Shown: piece by piece, positions 25,698 to 44,789 of the stretch
Numbering within the stretch: the first letter of the stretch is position 1
Layout: each line of letters opens with the position of its first letter
Assembly (NCBI GenBank): GCA_013239625.1
Contig: MU055753.1
Location: forward strand, 3,706,153-3,770,152
Origin: Lama guanicoe
Lineage: Eukaryota
Reading direction: 5' to 3'
Length of the DNA: 64,000 bases
Made by a program: the position numbers and the translations under genes
The notes under the pieces: model-generated
Database searches by the model: none
What the model was told of the DNA's origin: nothing
Seen by the model: the letters and a program-made list of their open reading frames with translations, nothing else

Positions 25698-28600
25698 ATG
25701 GGCCCCAGAGCAGGTGAAATGACCCTCCCTCCCCATCTCGGGAAGCAGCTCCCCAGTGGGACAGGACCACCCTCTTTCCTCTAGTCTGCTCTTGGGGGTC
25801 CTGCCCCAGGGCTCCCCCACTGGGCGTTAGGGAAGAGAAGTGAGATGGCACAGATGGGGCACTGGGCCTGGGGGTCCTGGCGGGGACAAGGCATGGATGA
25901 GGGGGACCATGGCTAGAAGGGACGGAGCTACCTAGGGGCTCAGGAGAAGATGGTAGCTGACCCCATCCCTCTGCTTGGGGATCTTGGGGCTCAGACTGTG
26001 AGGACAGAGGGTGGAGGGAGGGGTAGAGGCAAGAGTTTACACACATGTACACCTGCCAGGTGTACACACATGGGTCCACACCATCCACACGTGGATGTGC
26101 CATTATAGACGTGGCATTGGTAGGCATGTATACAGGCCACAACATACATGTGCACAAGCTTCCATAGTCACATGCCACCTGCTGCACATGCCGACACATC
26201 ATCACACGGGTGTGTACACAATCATACCACCAGACACACAGGCATGCTGTGTGGGCATGCATGCCACCACACACATACAACCCACCACATATGTGTGTTC
26301 ATCACCACATACCATTAGGGGCACATGCATACAATGTCAAAGACAGTCATCTATACAGTTAGACACGCTGTCACACACATGTTCACCTGATCAGAAGCAC
26401 ACCCAGGCACATGCGCTCAGGCTTAGGCTGGCATAGACAGGTGACCAGCACCATTGTGGCAGACACAGAGGCCCTGGGCAGACCCACACTGGATGCTCCC
26501 ACACGTGCTCACAGCTTGTTCTGTTCCAGGTGCCCTGGTGAGCCCGGGCCTTGCCCTCCTGGTGTCACTCACTGCCCACTGCTCTCCTCCCAACACCAAG
26601 GGTGCCTCCCAGGGAGGGCTGGATGCCAGCAGCGCCAACCTGTGGGCCAGGTGAGTGCAAGTTCTAAGTCCACAATCACATTTCCTGCAGCAGATTCCCT
26701 GGTAGGCCTGGGTAGGGGACAAGGAAGGACCATCTCCAGGGTCTGCATGTGATGGCCCAGGCATCTGGGGCAGGGCTCTGACTCCCGGCTCCAACATGGG
26801 GGCCTGGCCCTGCCTGCCTAGGTAACTCACCAGAGACGGCTCAGGGAGGCTGGTGTCCTGCACCAGAGTCATGCGCACATGGCTGGCACTACTCTCCTTG
26901 GCCTGGCAGGCAATCACTTCTTGTCCTGAGGCCTTTCAGCATTCGTTTCCCCCTCAAGCTTTGCTTCCCTCTCAGACTCCAAACTGGACCTCTCTCCAGG
27001 GGTATCATGCAGGGGGGATTGGAAGTCACTCATCTGCTGTGAATCAGTTGACCACTATGCTGACTGATCAGGCAGAGCTGGAGGCCAAGTTGGACCAGCT
27101 GAGACATGACCCCTCCCCGTGCATGAATTGTATTAGATTCACATCATGAGGAATGCCTGGCTGTGGGTGCCTGGCAGGTGCTCTCCAAACTCTCAGCCAT
27201 CGCTGGGACCATGGAGCCCTAAACTCTGGAACCAGGCCTCAGAGGAAGCGTAGACTCAGAGTCTGGACACTCTGGACTCAGGGGCCACTTTTAATCCCAC
27301 CCATGGCTCGGTGCCTGGCACCAACCAGGTACTCTCAGAGGAATGAGTGTGTGCACATGCGTGTCTGTGAAACTAGAGCCTGGCCGTCTGCACTTCCTGT
27401 CTCACTCCTCAGTGTTGAAGAGTGATCATCCTGCATGCTGCAGCCTGGAGGCCCCCAGCCTCCCACTCCCTCTGCCCCTCACTGTCTGCCTCCTTTCTGC
27501 CCAGTGCCAACACCTCCCTCCTGCAAGGCTTCTGGTGCCAGCCGGCCAGCCAGCTGTCCCGGGACCAGCTTGCAGCTTTGATCAGGAGGATGGCATTGCA
27601 GCAGGTCCCCCTCAGAGCCTGGCAGGTCAGCAGCGGCACCTGCAGTGAGCACCTGGGTGTCGAGGGCAAGGGTAGACTCCCTGGAGAAGCGCCCCGGGGA
27701 CAGGCAGGAGGGGAGGCATCCTTAGCAGAGGACCCAGGCCAGGACCTCAGGGCCGGGACATAGAGCAGCTCTCCTGGAGCACAGGGACCCCGCACTAGAG
27801 AACTGCATCCATTGTTTGTAGGCCAACCTGCCAATTTCACAGCCACCTAAGATGCACCTCTCAGGTCACCTGATGGAACATGAAGTTGGCCTCTGAGGTC
27901 AGCATCTCCTTCCCTTGAGCGATTTTCCAGCACGGCCCACTTTGGACCATTGCCAGGATTTCTCAGCCAATTGCCCACAGACTCCTGCCTCTTGCTCTGG
28001 GTTTGACGAGGGCTTGCCCACCTGGCCTCCAAGTTGTCCGGACTCCCAGGGGGATCTTCCAGCCTGCTAGCCTCTCCCCTACCTGGGCCACGAGAAGGGC
28101 CAGTTGAGCCCACCAGGACCCACAGCTGACACAAAGTCACCAGCCCCTGAGTTTAAAAAAAGAAAGGAAGAAAAGCTGTCATTTTGTCTTGTTATAAAAT
28201 TAATATAAAACTAGTAATAAATTTGAAACAACCCCAGAGTAGGCCAAGTGAGTGGGATAAGAAGCCCAGGCGGGGTCGGCAGCGGATAAGTGGACTCCAG
28301 GAACCACTGTGGTGCCGTGGGGGCTGGGGTGGGCAGGAGCCTGATGCCGGAAGTTGGGGGCTCTCAGGCTAGGTTTGACCCATTCTGAGGCCTGTTCTGA
28401 CGTGGAGGTTGAGGCAAGAAGAGGAAGACATGGAGTCCGTAACAGAGAGCCGGCAGGTGGAAAGAAGGGACAGGTGGACTTGGGGTGAGGGTGGAGAGGT
28501 GGGTGAGGGGCTTGGCCCAAGGAGGGCCCCACACTGAGGGGAGGGTGACGGGCAGAGAGGAAGGGGCTGGGTAGGGCCCAGGCGGGACGAGGGCATGACA

Positions 28601-31600
28601 AAGTGCCTGCGCTGCCCAGCTCAGCTGCCTGGCCAACCTGGCCGCCCGGCAAGGCCTCCAGCGTGACTTTGAGCTCCACCCTCCGGACCTGCTGCTCTTC
28701 TATGAGTGAGTGCCCCTCCCTGCCCAGCGTCTGGCTGGCTGGGCTGAGCATGCTCCCAGGGGCACCTCAGTCATTTGGAGGCCCCCCAGCTGGCCCTGCC
28801 CTACTGACAGCTCCTTACCTTCCCGCAGCCTGACACAGGTGAGAGAAGCCAACTGCCGGGCCTTCATCCACCGTGCCGCCCAGGGAGACACAGAACTGCT
28901 GGCCAACCTGCCTGACCAGAGGGCCGCCCTGCAGCACAGGGCCCTGGCCTGCCTGGTAGGCGCTGTGGGCTGGCCGGGCGAGGACAGGATGGGTGAGTGG
29001 GACCAAGCTCATGCTGACCTGCTATCCTGCAGGGAGGGCCCCGTCCACGGCTCAGTGCCTCTGACCTGCTGCTCCTCGGGGTCCTGGTGTGTGACATGGA
29101 CGCATCAAGCATCATGGCCGCAGACCCCCGTGTGCTGCAGAACCTGCTGCGCTGCCCCCGGCTGACAGCCACCCAGCAGTTCGCCCTCAACAGGCTGCTG
29201 GCCAGTGGCAGGACCAAGCTCGGGTGGGTGGGGGCCCGTCCCTTCTGCCCAGGCCTCCCCTCCTTGAGATGAGAGAGGAGGCAGCCTGGAGACTGGTGTC
29301 CACAGCCCCACTGACCTCCAGCCTCTGACCCAGCTCACATCCCACCCTGACCCTGCTGCCTACAGTGTATGGGTTTGGGGTGCTGTCCCCACCTGCTGGG
29401 CCCCGCAGTCCCCCTCCCCAGAGGCCTGGGGTGGAAGAATCTCTGCTGGGCAGGCCCTGGGAACTGTACTCAGACCTGATACAGAGCCCCCCTTTGCACG
29501 TCAGGCCCCCTGGCTCCTGGAACCTGGAGGGGCTGCAGGCTCTGGGACCTCTGGCCACCTATATCAGCCCTGGCCTGTGGATGCAGGTGCAGGAGGTAGG
29601 GCAGCACCTTGGGGCAGGGTAGGGGCTCCAGCCGACCTTCCATCAGCCCATCTAGGCCTGCGGGTCGGCTGTACAGACATTCTGATGCCCAAGTCGTGTC
29701 CCTGGTCACTCTCCATCACAGAGTTTCTGTCTGAGGGGAGGGAGGAGGGGACGGGTGGCTCTGGTGGCCCTCCCTAGGGTGTGGATTCTCCAGGCCCATC
29801 CCTCCAGGCCGTGGGCCTGGACTTCTTCGGCAGCATGGTGGCCATGTGCCGGGAGGGGCAGCTCAGCCAGCATGATGCCAGGCGCTTTGTCACCTGCTTC
29901 CTCGAGGCCAAGGCCAAGTTGGTTTCCTCACAGTTCAAGAGGGACACAGGTCAGTGTGGCCACCGTGTCTGGGGACACTGCATCTCCCCCTGCTCAGGGT
30001 CCTCATCCAGGAGTGGGGGCACCAGAGACATGGCAACCCACACTGAATCCCCTGAGCTTGGCCTAGGGGTCTTCATCCAGCCTCAGCAGAGTGGTCAGAG
30101 TCTGGTGGGGCAGGACTGGGAGTTGAGGTCAAGGTCAGAGTTGACTCAGTCTGGTCTGGGCCAAGTATTTGGCTAGGGGGTCAAGTTTGACGAGAGTCAT
30201 GGGTGGGTCATGGTTAGGAGTGAAGTGGGGCCCAAAATCAGCAGCAGTTGTCAGCTCAGGCCGAGGCTGACCAGCTCGGTCCTCAACACCAGCACCCCAC
30301 CCAGCCACAGGGAGAACCTGCATCCGTGGCGACATCACTGCAGCCACGCTGCAGGACAACCTCTTCCTGGTGCGCTACGACTGCTCACAGCTCGAGTCCT
30401 GCCTGGGCAACCGCGTGCTCAGGGCCAACCTGGACCCCCTGCTGCAGCACCCGCTGCCTGCCGAGTGCCAGCAAGTCGTCAAGACCAAGTTGGCTCAGGT
30501 GCGCTGGGGACCAGTAGTGGGAGGTGAGTTGGGGGCCAGCGGTGTGGCCTGACCCCCGCCCACCACTCGTTGCAGGTCTACCCGGGCGGCATCCCTGAGG
30601 AGCAGCTGCAGCTCATCCCCTCGCTGGTCTACCTCTACTCCCATGGTGAGATCGGCCGGTGGCACATCACATCCAGGGACACAGTTGTGGCCCTGCTGGC
30701 CCCAGATGGGGCCCTGGAGAACCAGACGGAGGTGAGGGCAGTGGGGGCTGTAGGAGGCTCCACTGACTCCAGCCTTGCTGACCCCAACCCTACCCACAGG
30801 CCATCCTGCAGAAGTTCCTGGACCATAACGGCACTGTCACTGGCGCCCTGCTTGTGGCCATCGGGGGCTCCCGCCTCTGCTGGATGAGCCCCCGGCAGAT
30901 CCAGGCCATCCAGCCCTCAGAGTTCCGGTGAGCCCACCCAGCAACTCACCCTCCACAGCTCTGAGCCAACTCCACTCTTTAGCCAAGGAAGGTTGGGGGA
31001 CACTGAGGCTCAGGCTGGGGCCCAGGCCAGGCCATCAGAGGGTATGCTCATTTCTTATGGCCACCATAACAAGGGGAGTGGCTACAAACAGCAGAGATGT
31101 ATCCTTTCACAGTCTGGAGGCCAGAAGTCTGAAATTATGGTGTCGCAGGCCCACCTCTTTCTGAAACCTGTAGGAGATGGTTCTTCCTACCTCTTCCAGC
31201 TTCTGGTGCTGCATCACCCCCATCTCTACCCCCATCATCACATAACCATCTTCCCCATGTCTGTGTCCAAATTTCTTCTTATGACCAGTGGTTAGATTTA
31301 GGGCTCACCCGAAATCAGCATGACCTCATCTCAATTTGATTATATCTGCACATAGGAAAGACCCTATTTCCAAATAAGGTCACATTCTGAGGTTTTGGGT
31401 GGATGTGAATTTGGGGGACACACTAGTCAGCCCAATGCCAAGGTGAAGAGGAAAGCTGTGGCTCAGGGAGAGAGGGCCAGGCCCCATGTCCAGAGGATGA
31501 GGGGCTGCTGGCCTGCCCTCAGCCCCACACCCTCCCCCAGGCTGGCCGGCACCCTGGATATCTCCTCCTGCCCTCAGAGCCGGAAGAACGTGCTCTACGC

Positions 31601-33029
31601 CAAGGCCCGAGAGGCCTTCAGCAGTACCAGGACAGCGGCTGCCTACTACCGCCTCATGCGCCCCTACCTCGGTGAGACCCCGCCCTGTGTGCGACACCCC
31701 TCCTCTGGAGCCCTGCCCTCCTCCAGAGCCCTCACCACTGCCCTACCCCCAGGTGGTGCCCCGGTGGAGGAGCTGCGGCACCTAGCCCAGGCTAACGTCT
31801 CCATGGACATTGACACCTTTACCAACCTGAACCCCCGTGTGCTTCAGGTGAGCCCAGGGGCTGCCCATCAGGTGTGGGGCAGGGCTGGCCGAGCTGGGGA
31901 GCCCTAGGTCATGTCTGCAGGCCCCAATATCCCCAAATTGGAGGTGTACAGATAGTGTGGGCCCCAGGTCACTTCTCCAGGCTGGTTCTGCCAGGTCTCA
32001 CCCCTGGATTGGTTAAACATTGACCCATGTCCCTCCTTCTATGGCCCCCTGGTTCCCTTGCAGAGCCTGAGTGTGGGCAACGTGACCACACTGCTAGGCC
32101 AGAATGTAGGGGACCTGCAGAAGGCTCGCAGCCACCCGACCATCAGCTCCTGGCTCCGCAGCCTCAACCAGTCAGCCCTGGGTGAGCTGGGCCTGGACAC
32201 GGACCCTACTGGCCCCACTGGCCCAGCCCACTCAACCACTGGGACCCCCAGCACCACACCCTGGATGCCCCAGCTAGCTCCCACCTCAGACCAGCCTGGG
32301 AGTGATGCCCCCAGCTCAGGTACAACCGCACCCACCCTCCCCCTCAGCAGGACATCCCCCCTTTGCCCTCTGTGCTCTGGGCCCTCTGCAGACCCCTGAC
32401 TGCTACTAGCTTCTCATCTTCACTCAGTCTCATTCTCTGCTGGCCAAATCTTTCCATCTGCCTCCTCGGATGACATCTGGGTGACACTGGCTTTCCCCTG
32501 CATCACCTGCCGTGTTAGTGAAGGACACAATTGTCTCCCCCAAACCCAATGAGCTGCAGAAGGTGGAGGGTAGGGAAGCTATGAGGTCCCTGTCTTTGCC
32601 CAAAAGAGTGGCTGTGCATGGGGGTCTTCATTGCTCTTCCCACCCACAGGGATGGTGTGAGCCTCCAGCCTAGGGCAGGGGCTGCCCAGGCCTCGGAGGC
32701 TGTGGGACAGCCTTGAGTGGGAACGGGGGGCACCCAGCAAGACTGAAGGGTGCTCCCTCCTTGTTCCACCTACAGGCAGCCCTCCAGCCCACCTTGGGTA
32801 CCTGCTACTTGCCATAGCCCTGCCCTCAGGCCTCCTGTGGCTGCTGTATTGGGGCACCCTGGAGCCTAGCTGGGACCACTCATGGGGCATCTGCACCATA
32901 GCTTCTGAAGGCAGTGCTGCCCCAGCACCACATGCAGGAAAACTGGGGCTATTAAGTGGAGCTGGACAACTACTCAGGCCAAGACACAGGCACCAGGCCC
33001 AGGGGACCTGGCCACGCCCCATGTCCTAG
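25698..33029 (+). CDS. MSLNL: Mesothelin-like protein (700 aa), intact, 15 coding exons
   Basis: Exons 25698-25713, 26530-26650, 27505-27625, 28620-28705, 28829-28955, 29033-29223, 29505-29595, 29808-29949, 30311-30498, 30576-30731, 30800-30927, 31541-31671, 31753-31847, 32064-32319, 32776-33029 (2103 nt, all in phase). Signal peptide MGPRAGALVSPGLALLVSLTAHC; LLQGFWCQPASQL, LVCDMDASSI, GPPGSWNLEGLQALG, CPQSRKNVLYAKA, GGAPVEELRHLAQANVSMDIDTF; hydrophobic C-terminal segment; AATAAA at 33204-33209. The start exon is the least certain part. Confidence 0.92.
31045..31440 (-). mobile_element. MLT1 (ERVL-MaLR) solo LTR in an MSLNL intron
   Basis: Diagnostic strings cacagtctggaggccagaagtctgaaat, gacctcatctcaatttgatta and accctatttccaaataaggtcacattctgagg. 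Confidence 0.8.
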
Positions 33030-33651
33030 GGGCCTACAGGGCCGGTCCCTGCCCACACCCAGCTCCCAGGACCTGGAGCCAGACTGAGGACCTGAGCCCG
33101 GGGTCACTTCCCCAGCCAGTGAGGGAGACGCTGCCCTGCCCTCTGGCCTCTTCCAGATGAAGAACGGGGGTTGGCAAAGGGGCTGATTTTGCTGATGGAT
33201 TTGAATAAAGGATGAGGGGATCTTCCTGCCTGTGTTCCTTTGCTCTGGGCCTAAGGAAGGCACAGAGACCCTCTTAGCTGGGGTCAGGACTTCCAGGGAG
33301 TCCCCTGGGGTGACAGTGTCACTAGAAGCCACACTGAGTGTTGGCCTGGCCTCAGGGGAAACAGCAGCAGGAAAGTCCCAAGAGCCCTCCTGCCTGGAGT
33401 CCCTCCTCTTTCCAGGTGCAAACAGGAGGGGGCTGCAACCCAGGGAACCATGCTTTATGGGGTCACAGCCATCAGGGGCCCTCCCACCCGGGGCCCTCCC
33501 ACCCAGTCCTCAAAACACTAGGGGGCACCACTGCGAGGGGGGTATGGGTCTTCTTTTATTGTGCTTCGGTGCCCTCAGGTCGGACAGGGACCACCCAGGC
33601 CTGCTCCCAGCCAGGCAGGGCCTCCACAGCAGGGCCTCCAGAGCAACGGGC

Positions 33652-36600
33652 TCAGCTCAGGATGAAGGCCAGGAGCAGATTTGAGGTCACAATGAGCACA
33701 GGTCCTGGTCCGAGAAGGTGGGGGCCTCCCGAGAGGGCCTCTGTGCGGAGAAGGGAAGACTCACACTCTCCCCCTCACTCTGCCCTGACCCCACCCGCCC
33801 GGCCACCCCAGCCCACCTCGGACGTTGAAGTCCAGAACCAGGTAGCCATTGGGGATGCCGCCATGGAGCCCCAGCCCCAGGCTGTCCAGGTCATCCTGTG
33901 ACTGCCGGGAGATCCAGTCCTGCACAAGGCTGTTCCCCTTCTCAGCCTTCAGGCCCACCAGGTTTGGGCCCAGAAGTTTCTGCACCTCAGCAATGGTCAG
34001 CGGCTGCCAGGGCCCCCAGACGGCAGTCAGGGTCCACTTGCCTTTCCCAGAAGGTTGCTTTCCTCTACTGTGTCCAAACCACCCACCCCATGCCTCCCCA
34101 TCCAGACCCTGCCTTGGCCCCTCCAGACTTTGGAGAGGGCCTTGGCTACCCCTCAAAGGCCCCACCCCTGGATGCCCCCCTTCTCTGTGGTTGTACCAGC
34201 ACAGCCTCTGTCTGCAGCTTCTTGAACGTGGCCAGGTCCATGTTTATGTTCTGCTGACTGAGAGCCCGCAGGTCCTCCATGGGGGCCCCACCTGCCCATG
34301 GGAGAAGGCCCTCTAAGTATGAGAGCTTGCAACAGCCCCTAGTCTCACCCTCTGACCACAGGCTACCAGAAGCCACTTCCTTTCCTGAGAGTTTTCCCAA
34401 AAATTCCTTTGCCTGGTGACCACCTGACCCTCTGGGTTGGAAGAAAGGCTGGAGGTGCCCAAAACTCACAGGATCTCAGCCTATACACACTTGGAGGGAC
34501 ACAGGGTACACTTTGGTCACACGGCCAACAGGCTGCCCAGTGAGGGGGGAACCTGGCAGCATGGATGCGGGAGCTTCAGGCATCACCCTCCCCTCCCCAG
34601 CCATGTCCTCCCTGGCTCACCCAGGTAGGGCTTGATATTCTCAAAGTATTCAGACCCTGTCATGTTCTTGAAGACAATGCGGGCCTTGGGATAGAGGACG
34701 GCTATCTGCTGTGGGCTGCATGCATCCAGGTCCTGCGGCCTGGTCACCCTGGGGAGGTAGCACAGGGCCAGGCAGTGAGCTGGGAGCATGGCACGCCCAC
34801 CACACCTGAAAGAGCCCTGGACTCACCAGACAACATTGAGGCTCATGGAGCCCAGCTGCTCAGGGCTGAGAAGGCACAGGTAGGTAGGGTGGAGAGTGGC
34901 CAGGGTCTCCAGGGTGGCCTTGTCCAGCTGGCCCCCTCTCACTACATAGCGGGCAATCAGGGCAGCCACCTGTGGGAAGAGGCCACTAGGTGGCTTGGGG
35001 CAGCGAGAGATGTATCCCCTTGGACCTGCACAACCTCACATGCTGTGTCTGCCCCTCCCCACCCTGGTAGATGGTCACCTGAGCATCCATCTTGTGTCCT
35101 TTGCTGACTTCGAGCAGAGATTTCACAGTCTCCAGGGATGTCACATTCCACTTGTAGATGTCCTCAGGGGTGACCGAAAGGAAGAAGTACCTCAGGTGCT
35201 GGATCAGGGACTCTGGGTATCCCTGTGGGTAGAACTTCCCCAGAAAGTGACCATGAGGGCCACAGCCACTCCCCGGGCAGCTGGGAAAGCCGAGCTATGG
35301 CAGGCAGGTGGGAGCCCGAGTCCTGAACTACCTTGTCCAATTTGCGCTTAAAAATGTGGAGATGCTGGTAGGTGAAAGGTATCAAGTTCACCCGGTCCAT
35401 CTGAGCAGCCAGCAGGGCCCCGTCCACACAGGCCTCCAGCTCCCACTCCTCGTAGAAGACGAGTTTTTCATCCACCACTTGGGCTTTCCGCCCCGGGGGG
35501 CAGGCCTTCTCTGCAGGGGTAGGCAGGGGGTTGGGGACTGGGCTTCTCCCATCAACCTCTTCCTCCCACACCCACACTGAGACCCTGGGCAACACATGAC
35601 CTCTCCGGGTCTCAGTTTATGCATCAGCAAAATGGGGTGTTTCTGTTCACTCTCTTGGGTCATCATGATTGACAAGAAGGGCCACAGGCGCAGGCAGGTG
35701 AGACATCACATGCCAGCCCCCACCCTACATCTTCTGACGCCCAATGGGGCTGGGCACTGTGCTCACTCTCTGTGCCCCGCCAGGCCCTTGGGATGATGAC
35801 AGTCAGCTCAGGCTGTGGCCAGGACTGGTCCCGGGAGGTGTGCTGCAGCCATGGGGTCGTGAGGCCCTGAGAACAAAGCAGCGCTGGGACTGAGCAGAGA
35901 AGCCTGGCGCTCAAGGACCCCCACCCAGGGCCAGAAAACCCTCTTTGATTCCCCAGAGGGGCCTTACCAATCCCGTGTCTGCAGCCTGGGCCCTGGAAGG
36001 TAACATCCACCCTGCAGGGGACGGCACACCAGGCTCAAGGGGATGGCCAGGGACTTCTAGCAATGCCTGCTGCAGTCCCCCACCCTGGCGAGGAAGGAGA
36101 CAAAGCTGGCCCCTCCCAGCCCCGTGCACACCCCATGGGTGTAGAAGCAGAGGGTTAGGCCCCTGCACCCCACGATATCACGTCCTGCAACACCACACCA
36201 GGGAGCACAGGCCTCCTCCTGGGGCCTCGCTGCTCAGGGCAGTCAGACACCTGTCTCATGGGCACCTTCAGTTTGGCCTGTGCCCCCATCACCACCCTGC
36301 CTCAACCTCCAACCCCGTAGGTCACCGCAGTCCAGCATGGGTGCCGGACATAGTCACCTCTCAGGGCAGAGATATGGCTGACAGCCTACCTGGGACTTGA
36401 GGCACCTGATGAGATTCAGGACACTTGTCTGGGCTCAGGGCACCTAATTAGATTCAGAGCATCTGCCCAGGATTCGAGGCACCTGCCTAGGGCAGGGTTG
36501 GGGGGCACTGTCCACAGCCAGGGAAGGAGGCATAGAGCAGGTAGCGCCTTTCCTAAGGCCCCGAGCCCTAGGGACCCACAGCTACCCTTGGACGCTCTCT

Positions 36601-36726
36601 GGCACTCCAGTATTTTGCCACAGCTCATCATCATTACTCACCGAGGCCTAGAAGCAGGAGCAGGAGGCTGCCATGAGTTGAGGTCCCATAGGACTCCAGT
36701 GGGGTTCGAGCAGTCTGCAAGGCCAT
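33652..36726 (-). CDS. MSLN: Mesothelin, short 401-aa form lacking the MPF-encoding exons 4-9
   Basis: Exons (- strand): 36726-36642 (MALQTARTPLESYGTSTHGSLLLLLLGLG), 36011-35968, 35866-35767, 35510-35332 (KACPPGRKAQVVDEKLVFYEEWELEACVDGALL), 35234-35079, 34969-34827, 34748-34621, 34291-34197, 34003-33817 (GLHGGIPNGYLVLD), 33740-33652 (GPI signal); 1206 nt in frame. AATAAA on - at 33555-33560. Confidence 0.94.
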
Positions 36727-39140
36727 GGTCTGTGAAGGACAGCCACTCTGATGTCCCCACTACTTCCCATCCCCACCGCTTCCCTGCACCCACGATACTG
36801 CCCCAGGCCAGTGTGGGGCCTTGTGGGGCTGCAGGGGTCTCAGGGCCCTGGAGGGCTACCAGCTCAAACCTTCACAGGCCTCCCCAGCAGTGGCAGTGTC
36901 TGTGTGTGTGGCCTCTGGCCCTCCTCTCAGGACCAATCAGCCTGCCTGGCCCGCCTCCTCCGGGAAACCTGCCCTTCTGCCAGGGGGGTCAGGTCTGAGT
37001 CAGCCTGGCCCTCAGCTGTGGGAGCCCAGGCGGGCGCCCATCCTCTCTCCCCATGGGGCAGGGCGGGAGAGTTTCGTGTGCAAGGAAGCAAGGCCTGGCT
37101 GGCCTTGGTGTCCCCACCCCAAGCAGAGGGACAGAGCAGTTTGGGGGCTGGGGGTCACGCTGACCCCTCAACCTGCAGCATGGCTGTCCTCCCCACCCAC
37201 CCACAGCCACAGGTGCCTGGCTTTGTGTAATCCCAGGGCCCTCCTAGGTAGACGAGGCTGCCACAGCCCACCTGCCATCCTGGTTTCCCTTCTGAGGTTC
37301 TTCCGGAAACAGAGGCCTGGACCAGTGTGAGTGGAAGATGGCTGGGGTGCTGCTCCCTAAAGAGGGGGGCTTGCAGGAAACCAAACCACCTTCCACTCTT
37401 GCCCTCCCAGAGAGACCCAGAGAGGGAGGCCGCCTACAGCCAAGTGCAGTGGAGCCATACCCTCCCCCAAACCTTCACCAAGGCCTGTGTCGGGCCCCAC
37501 CCCAGCTCAGAAATGGGGGAGGGGCATGTTTATGTCTCAGCAACCGCTTTCAGCCAGGCAAAGAGCCCAGCCTGGGGGAGTGCCCTGAAGAATGGGCCGC
37601 TGACTGGGGCCCCTACCTGTGGGGTGGGTGAGGCCAGGCAAAGGCTGTGCAGCCCCTGCTGTCTTCTCTCAGCCACTACCCCCATCCCATGTAACCAGGG
37701 ACCCCCCTAGTGCCCTAGCTGGGGTCTCCCACTATAGGCCCTGGAATCTGCAACCTACCCCCAGGTAGGCCAGATTGGGCCACAGACACACCTCAGCTGT
37801 CTTGGAGCTGCAGCTTCCAGAGTAACCCAGGTGTGACCTGCAGAAGCCACATCTGTTTCGGCCAGTCTAGGGCAGGCATATTTGTGTGACAAGGGAACAG
37901 TCCCCTATGGCACTCTGTCTCCTTATGCAAGTCTGCTCTGATGCTTCCCTTTCTGGGCCTGGGATGGTCCCATCTCCAACCCTGAGCCCTCCAAGACCAG
38001 TATTCCCCTGGCCCCCTGTCACTCATTAACCACCTCATACTCGCTGAGTGCCTATTGTGTGCTGGGCCCTACACGGATGCTGATACACACGGGGGTAGGT
38101 GATTCAAGCCCTATCCAGGACCTGGGGGTGGGGCCTGCCACAGAGAGGGCTGGCCCTGCTCCTGCCCTCCTATCCCTGCCCTGCTAGCCTGTGGGATCTG
38201 GCATCTGAGTGGACCACCAGCTCAACAGAGTGGTGTGAGATAGAGGTAGCTGTGACTGTGACAGAGGAATGGTCAGCTCCAACCCCCGAGCCCAGGGGTC
38301 ATCAGCTCATAGCCTCCAGCAGGTGTGCAGCTGCAGGACACTGGCTGAAGCTCTCTCCCGCCCCACTTGTCCCACCCACCTCCAGAACCTCCCACCCCAG
38401 CTTAACCACAGTCCCCAAAGTCTGGCCTTCAAATGATGGAAAATGAATTCAGACCACATTCCCTGCCAGCTTCAGGTTCCTCTGGTGAGGGTGGGCAGGG
38501 GCATGGATCACAGATTTAGGGTCTTGGACACAGGGTCATTTTATCTGCCTTAAGCACAGAGATGTTGTGTGGCCAGCCTGGGGTCACACAGCATGTCAGG
38601 AGTAGCTAGGGCTAGAGTAGAGTTGACCCTGAGGGCACTGCCCTCTGAGAACAGGGGAGGTGATCCTCACTGCTCCCCAAGTGCAGTGGGAACAAGGGAG
38701 GGGGCATACAGAGGGGGCAGGGGTGGGGTTTCCCCACCACCCCAGCCTGCTTGTGTGGGGCTGGACAGGGTCCCCTGCAGGGTGGGTCCCAGTACCAGCC
38801 TCCACTTAATCCCTGCTCCTACCCAGAGCTGCTTGACTAAAGGTGCTGACAGAGGTGTCCCCCACTCCCCTTCCCAAGCCTGCCCTCCCATGTGACCCCA
38901 CTCCACACGGATGAGGCCATGGTCATGAGCCTGGACCCTGGGCTAAGAGCTCCCAATCACCTCCACAGGATCTGGGGGACCCTGCTTGTGGGGACTCTGA
39001 TGTTCCAGGGTGATCAGCCAACTCTGAGCCTCCTCTGATTCAGTTTCGTCAACTGGGAAGCAAGAGGCTGGCAGCCTCTGAGGTCTGTCAAGGCAAACAA
39101 ATGAGGCACTGGCCGGCAGCTGGGAGTGCCAGTACTCAGG

Positions 39141-39160
39141 CCACAGGAATGTGTGGGAGG
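39141..39160 (-). promoter_or_regulatory. MSLN: MSLN promoter Canscript-like element (GC/GT box plus MCAT/TEAD site)
   Basis: The - strand reads CCTCCCACACATTCCTGTGG, matching the human MSLN Canscript as I recall it. A forkhead-like TGTTTGC lies at about 39093-39099 and a probable non-coding exon-1 donor (gtgatt) at 38955-38960. Confidence 0.75.
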
Positions 39161-41987
39161 ATGGAGACCTGGGGAGGGATGTGGGGTGGAGAGCTGCCTC
39201 TGCCTCTCCCACTGTGGGCGGGTGTGGGAGCCCCGGGCAGATTGACCCACGTACCAGGTGTGTGTAGAGCCACGCCCTTGCCGCTTAGGGTCTTACTCTC
39301 CCATTTCTCAGGTGGGGAAACTGAGGCTCGGTGCTGCAGGGAGGTCACAATCACACAGCAAGGCAAGGTGTGTTCTCCCTGCTGGTGCCATGAGAGTCTC
39401 CGTCGGCCACCCCCCAAGCCCAAGGTCAGCAGGTTCGGGGTGGTGGCTACTCAGCCAGAATGTGACTCCCGGGAGCGAGTTCCAGGATCAGGGCTGTTTC
39501 GCCTGCACATCACCATAGGGGTGGTCAGGTGTGGGGCTGAAGGAGCCCACCTACCGAGGTACCGGCTGTCTCCCAGGTGGGAGGTGGAAGCCACCTTCCT
39601 GCTGCTGTGGCTACAAGGTTAGACAATGTGTGTCTTTGTGCTAGCCGGATGCCAGCATCCGCATGCCGATCTGACTTTGCTCCATGGCTTTGGTGTGCAC
39701 CCCGGCAGATGGAGTCGCTGTGACTCCCTCACTGCCCACCCCAACCCTGTGTGCTCCAATATTTTGGTGAACAGGAATCCCCTGTGTGAAGTCTGTCTCT
39801 GCATTTCACATCTGCAAAGGCTTCTGTTGGCTGACCCAAGTATGTACAGCTGCCCCATCTCTGACCTTTTTCCATGAGCTGGGTTTTCTATTATGTGCAG
39901 TGGAGCCAAATGCTAATTGATACAAAATTCAGGAAGGCTGCCAGGTATAAGAACCAACTTACACATAGAGTAAGTGCCCTGGAAGAAAAGTTCCGTTTGC
40001 AGAGAACGACTGAAAACTTCTGGACAAGATGTAAAAAACCAATTCCCTAAGGGCTCTGGGGTATGAAGGAAACAAGACAGATTTCAGGTGGGAATTGATA
40101 CCAGCGTGGGGTGTGTCTCCCTTTGTGTGAGGGGCTTTATTGGGTGGAGCACTTAGACTCCAGCAGAAATCACACCACGTTTCTGGCTGAAGAGAGGAAG
40201 GAGCCCAGAATCCCCAGACAGTAGAGAGTGAATGGAGAACTCTGAAAAAGAGAGAGCCAGAGGAGGGAACCCCAAATTCTGTGCATGGATGCCACCTAGA
40301 CCTCCTGCTGACCCCTGAGCCATGTGTGTGCAGGGCAGACGGGAAACAGCTCAGATTACAAACTGGCCAAGACTGACCTCTGCCCTCCTCGGGGTGGCAG
40401 AGGTTACAGCTCAAGTCTGACTGAGCTCACTGTCCACCAAAACAGAGGCATCAACAGTCTTTGTAGGAATATAACAGAATGCAGTGTCCACACAACAAAA
40501 TAGTCACAACATTTGTGACTTGGCATAGGGAGAGCTGGGAGATTGTGACCCATTCTCCAGGGAAGAGAATCCATGCCAAGTTAAGATAGTTATTAGCATT
40601 ATTAGACAACGAGGGAATGGAAAATTAGCTCTTGTGAATGCCGAGGTAGGAAAAAATGACAGTATTTTCTAAAGAACCAAACAGGAAATATTAAAAATGA
40701 AAAATCTGAAATTTAAAAATTCCCTGGATGGACTTAACCGGATCCATCACTTCCGATTGAGGGTTAGGTGGGAGCTACCCAATTGCACAGGTAAATGGAT
40801 TGTGAGATGTGGCAGTTTCCTCTGTGTCTGCAAGGAGGAACTGCAGTCTGAGCTCAAAAGATACAGCGACTGTGGTGTGCCTGGGAAAGGAGAGGTCATG
40901 TCTGGTTTTAACTCTGATGGCATAAGAAGTATATGAAACACATTATTTTTGTTGTTGTTAAGATGACGGTAAAGCATTATATGTTTTGCCAGTAAGTTCT
41001 GTTCTCCCTTGTAATGTTAGGTTGACTTTGTTAAGAGACATTATCAAGTTAGAAGCAAAAGGTGAATTCCAAAGGCATCTGGCGTTCAATGACTCAGATT
41101 AAAGGAAGCTCTTCTCTGTGTATATCCTAACATTGAATTCTACACTTCAAATGGGTAAGTTACATAGTGTGGAAATTCTATCTCAGGGAAGCTGTTTTTG
41201 AAAGACAAGCCAAAGACTTGAACAGACACTTTACAAAAGAAGTTAACGGTAAATGGTCAATCAGCTCATGAGAAGATGCCCAACTCCACCACTCCCTGGG
41301 GAGATGCAAATCAAATCCACAAGGAGACACATACCCACCAGAATGACAACATTTAAAGGCACTGACAAGGCCAAGTGTGTCACGGATGTGGGACGGTTGG
41401 GAGTCTCAAACCCTGCTGGCGGGAGCACAAGGTAATATGGGCACTTCTGTTTGGCATTTTCTTACGAAGCTAAACATACAATTAACCATACAACTTAGCC
41501 ATTCTCCTCCTAAGTAACTGGTCCAGAGAAACAAATAAGTGCACAGAAAGACTTGTACATGAATATTCCTAGCAACTCTACTTACAATACCAAAATGGGG
41601 AAAAACAACTTCCCATCAATAGATAAATAAACAAAACATGGTATATTCACATGATGCCGTCCTAGTCAGCAGTAAGAAAGAACAAACTACTGATGTGAGG
41701 AGGATGAATTTCAAAATCATCATGCTGACTGAAAGAGGCTGACATCAAAGAGGACGTGATGTATGATTCTGTTTCTATAAAAATGTTAAACAGCAAACTA
41801 ATCTATTATGACAAAAAGCACATCAGTGGTGGCCAGGGGCCAGGCAGCTTCATCAAAATTAAGGATTCCTGTTCATAGGAGTAAGCAGGGAGGAAACTTT
41901 TGGGGGTGATGGAAATGTTCTGTGTCTTCACTGGGGGGAGATTTCATGGGGTGTGTAACCACCCAAGCTCTTTGGACTGTGCACTTT

Positions 41988-42118
41988 TTTAAAAATGTTA
42001 TTTGTAGGGGGCAGTAACTAGGTTTATTTATTTATTTTAAATAGAGGCACTGGGGATTGAACCCAGGACCTTGAGCTTACTAAGCACATGCTCTACTGCT
42101 GAGCTATACCCTCCCCCC
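41988..42118 (-). mobile_element. Vic-1-like tRNA-derived SINE with target-site duplication
   Basis: A and B boxes on - (tagctcagcagtagag, ggttcaatcccc); 15-bp TSD tggactgt(g/a)cacttt at 41973-41987 and 42119-42133. Confidence 0.85.
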
Positions 42119-42408
42119 TGGACTGTACACTTTAAATGGATGCCTTCATTGTGCATAAATTATACCAGAAAACATTGATTTGAAAATCAATAGCATAACA
42201 AGTGTTGGCAAGGATGTGGAGAAATTGTTACATTGTGCATTGCTTGTAGGAATGTAAAATGGTGCAGGGGCTGTAGAAAACAGTCTGGTAGTTCATCAAA
42301 AACTTAAGCACAGAATAACCACATGACCCAGCAATTTAAGATACACCCCAAAGATTTGGAAACAGGGACTGAAACAGATAACCTGTGCACCCACGTTCAT
42401 AGCAGTGT

Positions 42409-42541
42409 NNNNNNNNNNNNNNNNNNNNNNNNNNNNNNNNNNNNNNNNNNNNNNNNNNNNNNNNNNNNNNNNNNNNNNNNNNNNNNNNNNNNNNNNNNNN
42501 NNNNNNNNNNNNNNNNNNNNNNNNNNNNNNNNNNNNNNNNN
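42409..42541. other. Assembly gap (133 N)
   Basis: Run of N. Confidence 1.
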
Positions 42542-42605
42542 CACCGTGGATGAACCTTGAAAACATCATGCTCAGTGGAAGAAATCAGATACACAAGAGT
42601 GGTCA

Positions 42606-42722
42606 GGGGAGGGTACAGTGCAGTGGTAGAGTGTGTGCTCAGCATGCACAAGGTCCTTGGTTCAATCCCCAGTACCTCATTAAATAAATAAATAAAACCT
42701 AATATCTGGCCCCCCCAAAAAA
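42606..42722 (+). mobile_element. Vic-1-like tRNA-derived SINE inserted in L1
   Basis: ggggagggtacagtgcagtggtagagtgtgtgctcagcatgcacaaggtccttggttcaatccccagtacctc followed by (taaa)n. Confidence 0.85.
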
Positions 42723-44789
42723 TTATGGTGTGATTCCATTTATATGAAATGTCCACATTAGGGAAACCCATAGAGACAGAAAGTATAACAGAGGTTACCA
42801 GGGAGGCAAGGGAAGTGGGAGTTATTGTTTATTGGGTGCAGTTTCTGTTTCAGAAGATGAAAAAAGTTCTGGAAATTGGTGGTGGTGATGGTTACATAAC
42901 ATTGCAAATGTACTTAACCATCACTGAATTGTACACCTAAAAATTATTACAATGTAATTATTTATGTGTATTTTACCACAATAAAACATCAATAGCATTC
43001 CTGTCTGTCAGCAATCAGAACAAATTTAATAGGAAAATGTATAATTTCTAATAACAATGAAATCCACAAAGTAGATTCATAGAAATCAGCCTATCTGATA
43101 ACAAAGAATTTTTTATGGAACAACCCAGCATGATAAAGTGTCAGTTCCCCTGACATTATCCTATAGTCAATTCAACCCTAACAGTCAATTCAACCCTAGG
43201 AGAATTGTTTTTCAAGAACTCAACAGATTCATTGAACATACAGGGAATAAATATCCATGAACTAAACAGAAGAGGCAAGCTGCCAGACATTAAGACACCG
43301 CCACAGTGATTAAGATAGAAACAAAGGCACAGTCTACAGATTTCAAGGAAAATACACCCTGCGCACATGGAGCTTCACTCATGGAAAAGGTGGCTCTGCA
43401 GAGCAGTGTCGGGGGAGGGACAGATCCACAGGACCGATGGTGTTGGAAAATGGGACGCCCTGAGTGAAGAAAAGTAAAGCAAGAGCCCTTGTTTACATCA
43501 GACAAGTTGGATACCGGGTGCATTAAAGACCTGTATACCACCGAGGGGACTAGATGGGCAGAGAAAGGAGGGCCTGAGGAACGCAGGGAGATGTGGAGAC
43601 CTTCCACAACAGAACCTGCCCTGAACTGGTGGGTGAACGTGACGTCACTGGAGTTAAGGATTCCTATGCAATAAACAAATCGGCAGCTAACAGGCAGCTG
43701 TCAGAAGGAGAGAAGAGATGTCTAACAGCTGACAATGCCGTGTGTGGTTCAGAAACTGGGAGGACACGTGAAGAACCGCACATCAACAAGAAAAGCCAGA
43801 AACCGATAGGAAGGGGGCCCAGGAGGCAAGCAGGAATTCTCAGGAGATTGAGGAGCTAGAGGCTTGTGAAGCCAGCTTCAACTTTTGCAGGAACCCTAGA
43901 AATTCGAACTCAAAACAGGAGATTTACAAAATTCAAAAGGTGGATCACAGCAGGTGTTGGTGACCATATGCTGAGACAAACCCAGCAATAGATTTTTTTC
44001 CTAATATGCAAAAGTATGTGATGCTCTTTAAAGAAATGTAAGAAAATGTGGAAAGATGACAGTTGCCCTGGTTCCCACCTCCTGCCCAGTCCCTGCAGCC
44101 CACTGGGGGAGCCCCTCTAGACTTTCCTCATGGTGCAGTCCTGGTGCACAGCCCACCTCCTGCTCGCCTACCCATCATGCACTCCCCCTGCCTGTCCTGT
44201 CAGGAGTTGCCCTCCAGCTACCCTTGGCTTGTTCACCATTTTTGAGTGAACAAAACAATTTAGGGGCTGTTTATTCTGCAATTAAAAAAAAGAAAAGCTT
44301 TTTGCGTTTTTTTCCACCTGGCTGAGCCTGCTCCCATCAGGGCACCTCCAGCCACACCTAAGAAGTGGGATAAATAATCTCTTCTGGCTTGGCTGTTTCC
44401 ATTGCCAGTGTAGACCCATGTAGCTCTGATCCAGTAATCCCCATGAAGCCAAGGGCAGCCAGCTAGGTCTCCTGGCAGGACCCACATTCCCAGGGGACAG
44501 GAGCCGTGCCCAAAGCTCAGTAGGTTGGCTCCTGCTCCGATTTCTCAAAATAAAAAAACCTGTCCCCCAGTCTGGGCAAAATAGAAAAGGGGACCAGAGT
44601 CCGCTGGCTTGGAGCCTGGGGCAGACATACAGTGGGCCTCTGCTCCAGGTCACCACTTCCTAACCCTAACTCAGCTGGTTCTGCTGGCTGTGTGCTTGAG
44701 TGTGCTGGCCGAGGATGGGGCTGGGGGTGCAGAAGGCCGTGGGGCTGCCATTTGCCCAACTGCCTCCTGTTCCTCATGCCTGGCTGCCC

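What the first reader, a model, noticed from the sequence alone, without database searches (positions are those of the whole stretch)
35767..36011. Mini-mesothelin: in-frame genomic loss of the six MPF exons of MSLN
Seen: the 44-bp exon GWMLPSRAQAADTGL (36011-35968, ends phase 0, donor gtaagg) is separated by only a 101-bp gap-free intron (35867-35967) from the 100-bp exon GLTTPWLQHTSRDQSWPQPELTVIIPRAWRGTE (35866-35767, starts phase 0). Known: human MSLN has six exons here (about 50, 121, 80, 130, 194 and 91 bp; 666 nt, 222 aa) encoding most of the shed megakaryocyte-potentiating factor. I found no MSLN-strand remnant of them in the window. All other exons, the MUC16-binding segment (FYEEWELEAC), the GPI signal, the polyA site and the Canscript promoter are intact. 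Inference: this lineage makes a functional GPI-anchored mesothelin with essentially no MPF, a natural domain knockout implying MPF is dispensable or is compensated, possibly by the intact MSLNL next door. The loss may be shared with other cetartiodactyls, which I cannot verify.
Basis: partly seen in the sequence, partly recalled or inferred. Interest (0 to 1): 0.85.

Follow-up and report, generated by a model that had tools for sequence, protein, structure and literature searches.

The report
Known MPF-less mesothelin gene of Laurasiatheria
This camelid mesothelin gene really lacks the six exons that encode megakaryocyte-potentiating factor, but the same in-frame deletion is shared by all Laurasiatherian mammals sampled, was published in 2011 and is already in the RefSeq annotation, so it is a correct rediscovery and not a new finding.

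Summary
On the minus strand, the 44-bp exon (36011-35968) is followed by a gap-free 101-bp GT..AG intron and then the 100-bp exon (35866-35767). The ten coding exons give an intact 400-codon frame. Pfam places the flanking exons at Mesothelin profile positions 1-28 and 268-300. About 225 residues, which is most of MPF, are missing, and tblastn finds no remnant in the window.

It is not an assembly artefact. Single 10.5-kb contigs from two independent DNA runs span 33400-38400 without gaps. An RNA contig from a close relative, read as Camelus, carries the 35968|35866 junction.

The window matches Vicugna pacos RefSeq mesothelin isoforms at 100% over the exons. The same exon 3 to exon 10 junction occurs in camels, whales, hippo, ruminants, pig, horse, rhino, carnivores, bats and pangolin. 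All 86 proteins that hold the MPF region come from Euarchontoglires or marsupials.

This is the Laurasiatherian MSLN exon deletion of Kim & Hahn 2011 (PMID 21132261), restated for dog in PMC11417096. It is real, functional-looking and ancient, and it is already known. One unchecked lead remains: elephant, tenrec, sengi and tree-shrew protein models show the same junction.

The parts
36642..36726 (-). First coding exon of MSLN. It holds the ATG at 36726 and most of the signal peptide (MALQTARTPLESYGTSTHGSLLLLLLGL), with donor GT at 36641-36640.
   Evidence: Pfam PF06060 profile positions 1-28. 100% match to alpaca RefSeq isoforms P0033 and P0066. RNA joint 36011|36642.
35968..36011 (-). 44-bp exon (human exon 3 equivalent) reading (G)WMLPSRAQAADTGL. 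It holds the end of the signal peptide and ends in phase 0.
   Evidence: 100% tblastn match to P0033 residues 29-43.
35867..35967 (-). 101-bp chimeric intron left by the deletion of the six MPF exons. It is GT..AG and has no gap.
   Evidence: It is spliced out in an RNA contig of run X15 (joint 35866|35968, depth 6.3). It is spanned by single DNA contigs of runs X7 and X8.
35767..35866 (-). 100-bp exon (human exon 10 equivalent). It encodes the last 33 residues of the MPF portion and includes a minimal furin motif, RAWR.
   Evidence: Pfam PF06060 profile positions 268-300. It aligns to Microcebus P0010 from residue 268. Alignment of 17 Laurasiatherians.
35332..35510 (-). 179-bp exon that starts the mature mesothelin. 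It holds the Cys pair and the FYEEWELEAC segment, where the Tyr, Trp and Glu named in PMC11417096 as needed for CA125 binding are conserved.
   Evidence: Pfam profile positions 302-360, E 9.6e-31. phmmer hits. No RNA contig covered this exon, which may be due to a filter.
33655..35234 (-). Six further coding exons: 35234-35079, 34969-34827, 34748-34621, 34291-34197, 34003-33817 and 33740-33655. They encode the rest of mature mesothelin and the hydrophobic GPI-signal tail. The stop codon is TGA at 33657-33655.
   Evidence: all AG/GT, open frame. RNA joints 34969|35079, 34291|34621, 34003|34197 and the last intron. Pfam.
33556..33561 (-). AATAAA polyadenylation signal downstream of the stop codon. 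The coordinates were read by eye and may be off by a few bases.
   Evidence: Sequence read. RNA contigs begin at 33537 and 33564.

Best explanation
This is the MSLN (mesothelin) gene of a South American camelid, either alpaca or a near-identical relative. It carries the ancient genomic deletion, shared across Laurasiatheria, that removed the six exons encoding most of megakaryocyte-potentiating factor (MPF).

The two breakpoints lay in the introns after exon 3 and before exon 10. Both of those exon borders are in phase 0, so what remains is a short chimeric intron (101 bp here) that is spliced normally. The frame runs from the signal peptide straight into the last 33 residues of the MPF portion and then into mature mesothelin.

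Shown here: the product is a 400-aa precursor.
Inferred from homology: it has a signal peptide, a pro-piece of about 40 residues ending in a minimal furin motif (RAWR), the mature domain with the conserved MUC16/CA125-contact residues, and a GPI-anchor signal.

The gene is transcribed and spliced this way in the closest relative with RNA data. It has been kept open under purifying selection in many Laurasiatherian species. MPF is therefore dispensable in this superorder, while the membrane-bound mesothelin module is retained.
For: - **Structure and frame:** searches show ten exons, all with AG/GT sites, giving a 1203-nt ORF.
- **Missing part:** Pfam PF06060 places exon 1 at profile positions 1-28, the 100-bp exon at 268-300 and the next exon at 302-360. 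Alpaca P0033 aligns to Microcebus P0010 at residues 15-42 and 268-628, so residues 43-267 are absent. tblastn finds no MPF remnant in the window.
- **Real DNA:** runs X7 (organism A) and X8 (organism D) come from different studies. Each holds one 10,554-nt contig that covers 33400-38400 with 6-7 substitutions and no gap, at the same depth as their other contigs. In all, 14 runs hold at least half of the sampled words; the listed holders come from 13 studies.
- **Expression:** an RNA contig of run X15 joins 36642|36011 and 35968|35866 with GT..AG ends.
- **Species:** P0033 and P0066 (Vicugna pacos RefSeq) are 100% identical over the exons.
- **Distribution:** the same junction occurs in Camelus, hippo, whales, Bos, Capra, Moschus, Sus, Equus, Diceros, carnivores, bats and Manis. 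All 86 holders of the MPF region are Euarchontoglires or marsupials.
- **Selection:** in the exons, the camel RNA differs from the window at 11 synonymous and 6 non-synonymous sites. Mean pairwise identity among 17 species is 0.75 in the mature part.
- **Literature:** PMC11417096 states that dog mesothelin lacks MPF. It cites Kim & Hahn 2011 for the same exon deletion in cow, pig, horse, panda, hedgehog and dog.
Against: - No RNA run of the window's own species was found. The junction reads come from a relative about 2% diverged.
- The RNA contigs did not cover the 179-bp exon (35510-35332). One low-depth contig (depth 2) joins 35767 directly to 35234, which would shift the frame. Part of the transcripts may therefore be non-productive, although the tool warns that conserved exons can be filtered out.
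- Protein-level function, furin cleavage and GPI anchoring are inferred from homology only.
- The syn/non-syn count is small. It omits split codons and the cluster of changes at the end of exon 34003-33817.
Confidence: 0.93

Rival explanations
1. Assembly artefact. The six exons exist in the animal but were collapsed or dropped from this assembly.
For: The intron is unusually short (101 bp), and GC-rich subtelomere-like regions are often badly assembled.
Against: There is no N in or near the region. Two independent runs from different studies and differently coded organisms each give one contig across the whole 5 kb at normal depth. Fourteen runs hold at least half of the sampled words. The spliced RNA of a relative has the same junction. 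More than 40 other Laurasiatherian annotations show the same protein junction.
Confidence: 0.01
2. Decaying pseudogene. After losing MPF, the gene is no longer functional in camelids and is merely still open by chance.
For: A camel RNA contig skips the 179-bp exon and would hit a stop codon. Introns are retained in several RNA contigs. The furin motif is weakened from RARR in camel to RAWR here. Mesothelin-knockout mice showed no anatomical or histological abnormality and had normal platelet counts, according to PMC11417096.
Against: The 400-codon frame is intact with ten canonical splice-site pairs. The frame is kept in species of five orders after a deletion that PMC11417096, citing Kim & Hahn, places in Laurasiatherian evolution. 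Synonymous changes outnumber non-synonymous ones 11 to 6. The functional residues and N-glycosylation motifs are conserved. Dog mesothelin of this architecture is expressed in mesothelium and over-expressed in mesothelioma (PMC11417096).
Confidence: 0.04
3. A loss specific to the camelid or cetartiodactyl lineage. This would make it a recent natural domain knockout.
For: The window by itself is compatible with any date for the loss.
Against: The identical exon 3 to exon 10 junction (…AAD-x-x-x | G-x-x-T-P-W-L-Q…) is present in Perissodactyla, Carnivora, Chiroptera and Pholidota as well as in all cetartiodactyl branches. No Laurasiatherian protein holds the MPF region. The loss was published as Laurasiatheria-wide, hedgehog included.
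Confidence: 0.02

Closest known systems
Laurasiatherian MSLN exon deletion (Kim DS, Hahn Y. Int J Mol Med 2011;27:289-93, PMID 21132261), as summarised in PMC11417096
   Same: It is the same gene and the same missing part (the MPF portion). The proposed mechanism is the same: the two introns were joined by non-homologous end joining, leaving an in-frame gene. The window's species belongs to the same clade. The protein junction here is the one seen in cow, pig, horse, panda and dog relatives.
   Different: Nothing differs in kind. Camelids were not among the six species named in the summary I could read, so this is one more species. The original paper is not held in the library, so I could not compare breakpoints or intron length.
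Canine mesothelin (XP_038525606; PMC11417096)
   Same: The precursor lacks MPF. It has a signal peptide, a furin-type site, the Cys pair, two N-glycosylation motifs and a GPI signal, and the CA125-contact Tyr/Trp/Glu residues are conserved. All of these are also seen in the window's model.
   Different: Dog has RDRR at the furin site where the window has RAWR. Dog expression was measured by RT-PCR and qPCR. For the camelid there are only RNA contigs from a relative.
Full-length MSLN precursor of Euarchontoglires (for example Microcebus P0010, 642 aa; mouse P0178, 625 aa)
   Same: It is the orthologous gene, in the same Pfam family PF06060. The exon borders are the same outside the deleted block, and identity is 56% over the retained 320 residues.
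   Different: These proteins carry about 225 extra residues (P0010 residues 43-267) that form most of the shed MPF. Those residues are absent here.

Membership tests
Mesothelin family (Pfam PF06060), MSLN orthologue | Significant match to the Mesothelin profile, in colinear order | tested here: met
   Single exons score 87-107 bits against a cut-off of 25.8, at profile positions 302-360, 362-412 and 536-596. Exon 1 falls at positions 1-28 and the 100-bp exon at 268-300, both just under the cut-off on their own. The alpaca protein P0033 with the same exons scores 554 bits.
Mesothelin family (Pfam PF06060), MSLN orthologue | Orthology to MSLN and not to the paralogue MSLNL | tested here: met
   The best hits are proteins that their sources name mesothelin, at 69-100% identity. 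A second, much weaker mesothelin-like gene lies tail to tail on the + strand at about 27.5-32.4 kb. From my knowledge of the human locus, this is where MSLNL is expected.
Mesothelin family (Pfam PF06060), MSLN orthologue | N-terminal signal peptide, C-terminal GPI-anchor signal, and conserved Cys pair and CA125-contact residues | tested here: inconclusive
   The motifs are visible in the translation: a hydrophobic L-run at the N-terminus, …ALSGGPHLLGPGPVLIVTSNLLLAFILS at the C-terminus, and C…FYEEWELEAC. They match the features listed for dog and human in PMC11417096. No signal-peptide or GPI predictor was run, and there is no protein evidence.
Laurasiatherian MPF-less MSLN allele (Kim & Hahn 2011) | Exons 4-9 are absent from the genome, with exon 3 and exon 10 separated by one short intron | tested here: met
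   The 101-bp intron is 35867-35967 and has no gap. There is no MPF remnant by tblastn. Independent DNA contigs span the region.
Laurasiatherian MPF-less MSLN allele (Kim & Hahn 2011) | In-frame junction that is used in the mRNA | tested here: met
   The borders are phase 0 on both sides. The RNA joint 35866|35968 is seen in run X15, which comes from a close relative and not from the same species. RefSeq alpaca isoforms have this junction.
Laurasiatherian MPF-less MSLN allele (Kim & Hahn 2011) | The junction is shared by other Laurasiatherian orders and absent from Euarchontoglires and marsupials | tested here: met
   The alignment of 17 species from five orders shows it, as do further species. 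All 86 holders of the MPF region are Euarchontoglires or marsupials. A few short models with the same junction exist outside Laurasiatheria (Tupaia, Plecturocebus and three afrotherians), and their genomic basis is unknown.
Laurasiatherian MPF-less MSLN allele (Kim & Hahn 2011) | Homologous DNA breakpoints in all orders, meaning a single ancestral event | not testable with these tools
The original paper is not held.

The most novel reading that the evidence does not exclude
The MPF module may have been dropped more than once in placental mammals. Protein models of elephant (P0200), tenrec (P0202), elephant shrew (P0024) and tree shrew (P0108) show the same exon 3 to exon 10 junction as Laurasiatheria, yet aardvark (P0199) and a second tree-shrew model (P0194) keep exon-9-like residues. 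If these short models reflect genomic losses or fixed exon skipping, and not gene-prediction shortcuts, then the Laurasiatherian deletion would be one case of a repeated loss along a ready-made in-frame splice path. A smaller second point concerns the left-over pro-piece. Its furin motif is lost in pig, several bats and pangolin, and is weakened to RAWR in this camelid, so the pro-piece may be decaying.
Probability: 0.25. Interest if true: 0.35.

Novelty: already known. Interest (0 to 1): 0.12.

Why it matters
The finding adds little beyond confirmation. It shows that the scan's reader can recognise a real in-frame multi-exon deletion from raw sequence. It also adds camelids, with DNA and RNA read support, to the species known to carry the Laurasiatherian MSLN deletion.

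The underlying biology was already stated in the literature. MPF is dispensable across a whole superorder of mammals, while GPI-anchored mesothelin is kept. This matters for veterinary use of mesothelin or MPF as tumour markers, because serum MPF assays cannot work in dogs, cats, horses, livestock or camelids. It also bears on ideas about MPF in lung thrombopoiesis (PMC11417096).

Tried and rejected
- **Assembly collapse:** rejected by contigs of independent runs.
- **MPF exons moved elsewhere in the window or onto the other strand:** rejected by tblastn with two full-length proteins. The only weak hits lie in the paralogue on the + strand.
- **Reading Kim & Hahn 2011:** the paper is not held, so I rely on the summary in PMC11417096.
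- **Fetching pig and donkey MSLN loci:** I did not try again.
- **Protein length alone as evidence of the deletion:** rejected as insufficient. Short isoform models also exist in species that have MPF, such as squirrel P0014, Rhinopithecus P0090, Theropithecus P0143 and pika P0204. I relied on the junction sequence and on the MPF-region search.
- **Joined model:** Exons were searched one by one by reference, and codon effects were computed exon by exon with split codons skipped.

Full report
**What is in the sequence**

The region was read on the minus strand, and the exon model was checked by script. The MSLN coding sequence starts at the ATG at 36726. The exons are:

| Exon (minus strand) | Size | Note |
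|---|---|---|
| 36726-36642 | 85 nt | ATG exon |
| 36011-35968 | 44 nt | human exon 3 equivalent |
| 35866-35767 | 100 nt | human exon 10 equivalent |
| 35510-35332 | 179 nt | start of mature mesothelin |
| 35234-35079 | 156 nt | |
| 34969-34827 | 143 nt | |
| 34748-34621 | 128 nt | |
| 34291-34197 | 95 nt | |
| 34003-33817 | 187 nt | |
| 33740-33655 | 86 nt | ends in TGA |

Every internal border is AG/GT. The sum is 1203 nt, which is 400 codons plus the stop. The 44-bp exon ends in phase 0 and the 100-bp exon starts in phase 0, with exactly 101 bp (35867-35967) between them. The window's only N runs are at 42409-42541 and 45982-46130.

**What is missing**

- Exon by exon, Pfam's Mesothelin profile (PF06060, 624 positions) places the ATG exon at positions 1-28, the 100-bp exon at 268-300 and the next exon at 302-360.
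- The alpaca RefSeq protein P0033 has these same exons. It aligns to mouse-lemur mesothelin P0010 (642 aa) at residues 15-42 and again from residue 268 to 628. About 225 residues, P0010 43-267, have no counterpart.
- tblastn of P0010 and of the colugo protein P0012 against all six frames of the window finds the retained exons strongly and nothing for the MPF block on the MSLN strand. The only weak matches (E 0.007 to 0.07) lie on the + strand at 28.6-29.2 kb, inside the neighbouring mesothelin-like paralogue.

**Is it real DNA?**

- The 4-kb stretch is held almost completely (0.94-0.98 of sampled words) by 14 runs from four differently coded organisms. The holders listed in that search come from 13 studies.
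- I laid two of these runs from different studies, X7 (organism A) and X8 (organism D). Each gives a single 10,554-nt contig across the whole of 33400-38400, with 6-7 substitutions and no insertion or deletion. Depth is the same as for their other contigs.
- The tool flags these near-identical contigs as possible sources of this DNA. Their coded samples and studies differ from S1, the sample that marks as the possible source.
- A collapse private to one assembly is excluded.

**Is it used?**

- The RNA runs that hold part of the stretch differ from the window at about 2% of positions, and their changes match Camelus proteins. For example, the end of exon 34003-33817 reads FSVQ as in P0002. I therefore take them to be camel.
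- In run X15 one contig (depth 6.3) joins 36642 to 36011 and 35968 to 35866, both with GT..AG ends on the minus strand. This is exactly the predicted junction. Joints for four other introns are also seen.
- Several contigs retain introns. No contig covers the 179-bp exon 35510-35332. One low-depth contig (depth 2) joins 35767 directly to 35234, which would shift the frame. The tool warns that conserved exons may be filtered out as human-like, so I do not read the hole as absence. I record the skipping form as a minor or non-productive isoform.
- No RNA run of the window's own species was offered.

**Whose genome, and how widespread?**

- A phmmer search with the 59-residue exon returned P0002, a 405-aa protein with the same architecture.
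- The follow-up search named P0002 as Camelus bactrianus mesothelin isoform X2. It also showed that mesothelin of about 400 aa is what the sources (mostly NCBI, with some UniRef entries) list for camels, alpaca, hippo, whales, dolphins, yak, goat, musk deer, pig, peccary, donkey, rhino, cats, dogs, seals, panda, mustelids, hyena, many bats and pangolin. Primates and rodents have 620-650 aa.
- Alpaca isoforms P0033 and P0066 are 100% identical to the window over the exons. The window is therefore Vicugna pacos or a near-identical lamine, which fits four closely related organisms holding the DNA.
- Length alone is not proof, because short isoform models also exist in species that have MPF. I therefore inspected the junction itself. 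In 17 aligned species from Cetartiodactyla, Perissodactyla, Carnivora, Chiroptera and Pholidota, the signal-peptide exon (…SRAQAADTGL) runs straight into G-V/L-x-T-P-W-L-Q.
- Conversely, I searched with only the MPF region of P0010 (residues 40-295), using length limits that included the 400-aa proteins. It found 86 holders. All are primates, colugos, rodents, lagomorphs or marsupials, and none is Laurasiatherian.
- Marsupials hold the region, so the full-length form is ancestral and the short form is derived.

**Already known**

PMC11417096 (Front Vet Sci 2024) reports that expressed dog mesothelin lacks the MPF portion. [quoted passage not shown] The 2011 paper itself is not held. The window shows one more species with this published deletion.

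**Does the gene still work?**

*Shown:*
- The frame is open and all splice sites are canonical.
- Between the window and the camel RNA, changes in whole codons of the exons are 11 synonymous and 6 non-synonymous. Sixteen further changes lie in introns or the UTR. Since non-synonymous sites are roughly three times as numerous, this points to purifying selection, although the numbers are small.
- Among 17 Laurasiatherians, mean pairwise identity is 0.75 in the mature part, 0.63 in the 33-residue remnant and 0.65 in the signal-peptide part.

*Inferred from homology with the dog and human features listed in PMC11417096:*
- a signal peptide;
- a short pro-piece;
- cleavage at R-x-x-R;
- the Cys pair;
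- the Tyr/Trp/Glu needed for CA125 binding (FYEEWELEAC);
- two N-glycosylation motifs (NVT, NMT);
- a GPI signal.

The furin motif is RAWR here and RARR in camel. It is absent in pig (RPQG), three of the four bats aligned (RALQ) and pangolin (RACQ). Cleavage of the left-over pro-piece may therefore no longer matter.

**A lead outside the finding**

- The six afrotherian mesothelin models found are all short, at 349-512 aa.
- Elephant, tenrec and elephant shrew show an exon 3 to exon 10 type junction, as do a tree-shrew RefSeq model and a titi-monkey model.
- The aardvark model and a second tree-shrew model keep exon-9-like residues (…ALRGLLPMLDRPALFSPQ | GILAS…).
These models may be prediction shortcuts along an in-frame path, or they may reflect real repeated losses.

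**Limits**

Exons were handled one by one by reference.
I only saw weak mesothelin-family matches on the + strand at 27.5-32.4 kb.

**Verdict**

The novelty class is 'already known', and interest is low.

Noticed in passing
window 35234-35767 (minus strand): One low-depth RNA contig of run X15 (depth 2, side 30) joins the 100-bp exon directly to exon 35234-35079 and skips the 179-bp exon. That shifts the frame and meets a stop codon within about 25 codons. No RNA contig covered the 179-bp exon at all, possibly because of the human-likeness filter.
   Followed up: partly
window 35780-35791 (minus strand); alignment: The furin-type motif before mature mesothelin is RAWR in the window, RARR in Camelus, Bos, Capra and hippo, and RDRR in the four carnivores aligned. 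It is lost in pig (RPQG), three of the four bats aligned (RALQ) and pangolin (RACQ). The left-over pro-piece may no longer need to be cleaved.
   Followed up: partly
proteins P0200, P0202, P0024, P0199, P0020, P0201 (Afrotheria); P0108 and P0194 (Tupaia); P0122 (Plecturocebus): All afrotherian mesothelin models found are short (349-512 aa). Elephant, tenrec and elephant shrew show the same exon 3 to exon 10 junction as Laurasiatheria, as do a tree-shrew model and a titi-monkey model. Aardvark and a second tree-shrew model retain exon-9-like residues. This could be repeated loss or a prediction artefact. The genomes could not be checked.
   Followed up: partly
window about 27500-32400, + strand: A second, much more diverged mesothelin-family gene lies tail to tail with MSLN. 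There are weak tblastn matches to both the MPF part and the mature part of MSLN, and a Pfam PF06060 hit on ORF 31395-31907. It is probably MSLNL. Its integrity was not examined.
   Followed up: no
window 34292-34620 and 34827-34969 region: Camel RNA contigs (X15 records 3-5, X18 record 8) run through the introns between exons 34748-34621 and 34291-34197, and between 34969-34827 and 34748-34621. This means either retained introns or unspliced RNA or DNA in the libraries.
   Followed up: no
window about 39140-39170 (minus strand): A CCCACACATTCCTG-type motif (MCAT/TEAD-like plus a CACCC-like element) lies about 2.4 kb upstream of the ATG. I recognised it from memory only and did not test it, and my read-laying stopped at 38400.
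   Followed up: no
window 40001-44000 and N runs 42409-42541, 45982-46130: An AT-rich block (GC 0.39-0.43, against about 0.6 around it) contains one of the two N runs. It is probably an interspersed repeat insertion between MSLN and the next gene.
   Followed up: no
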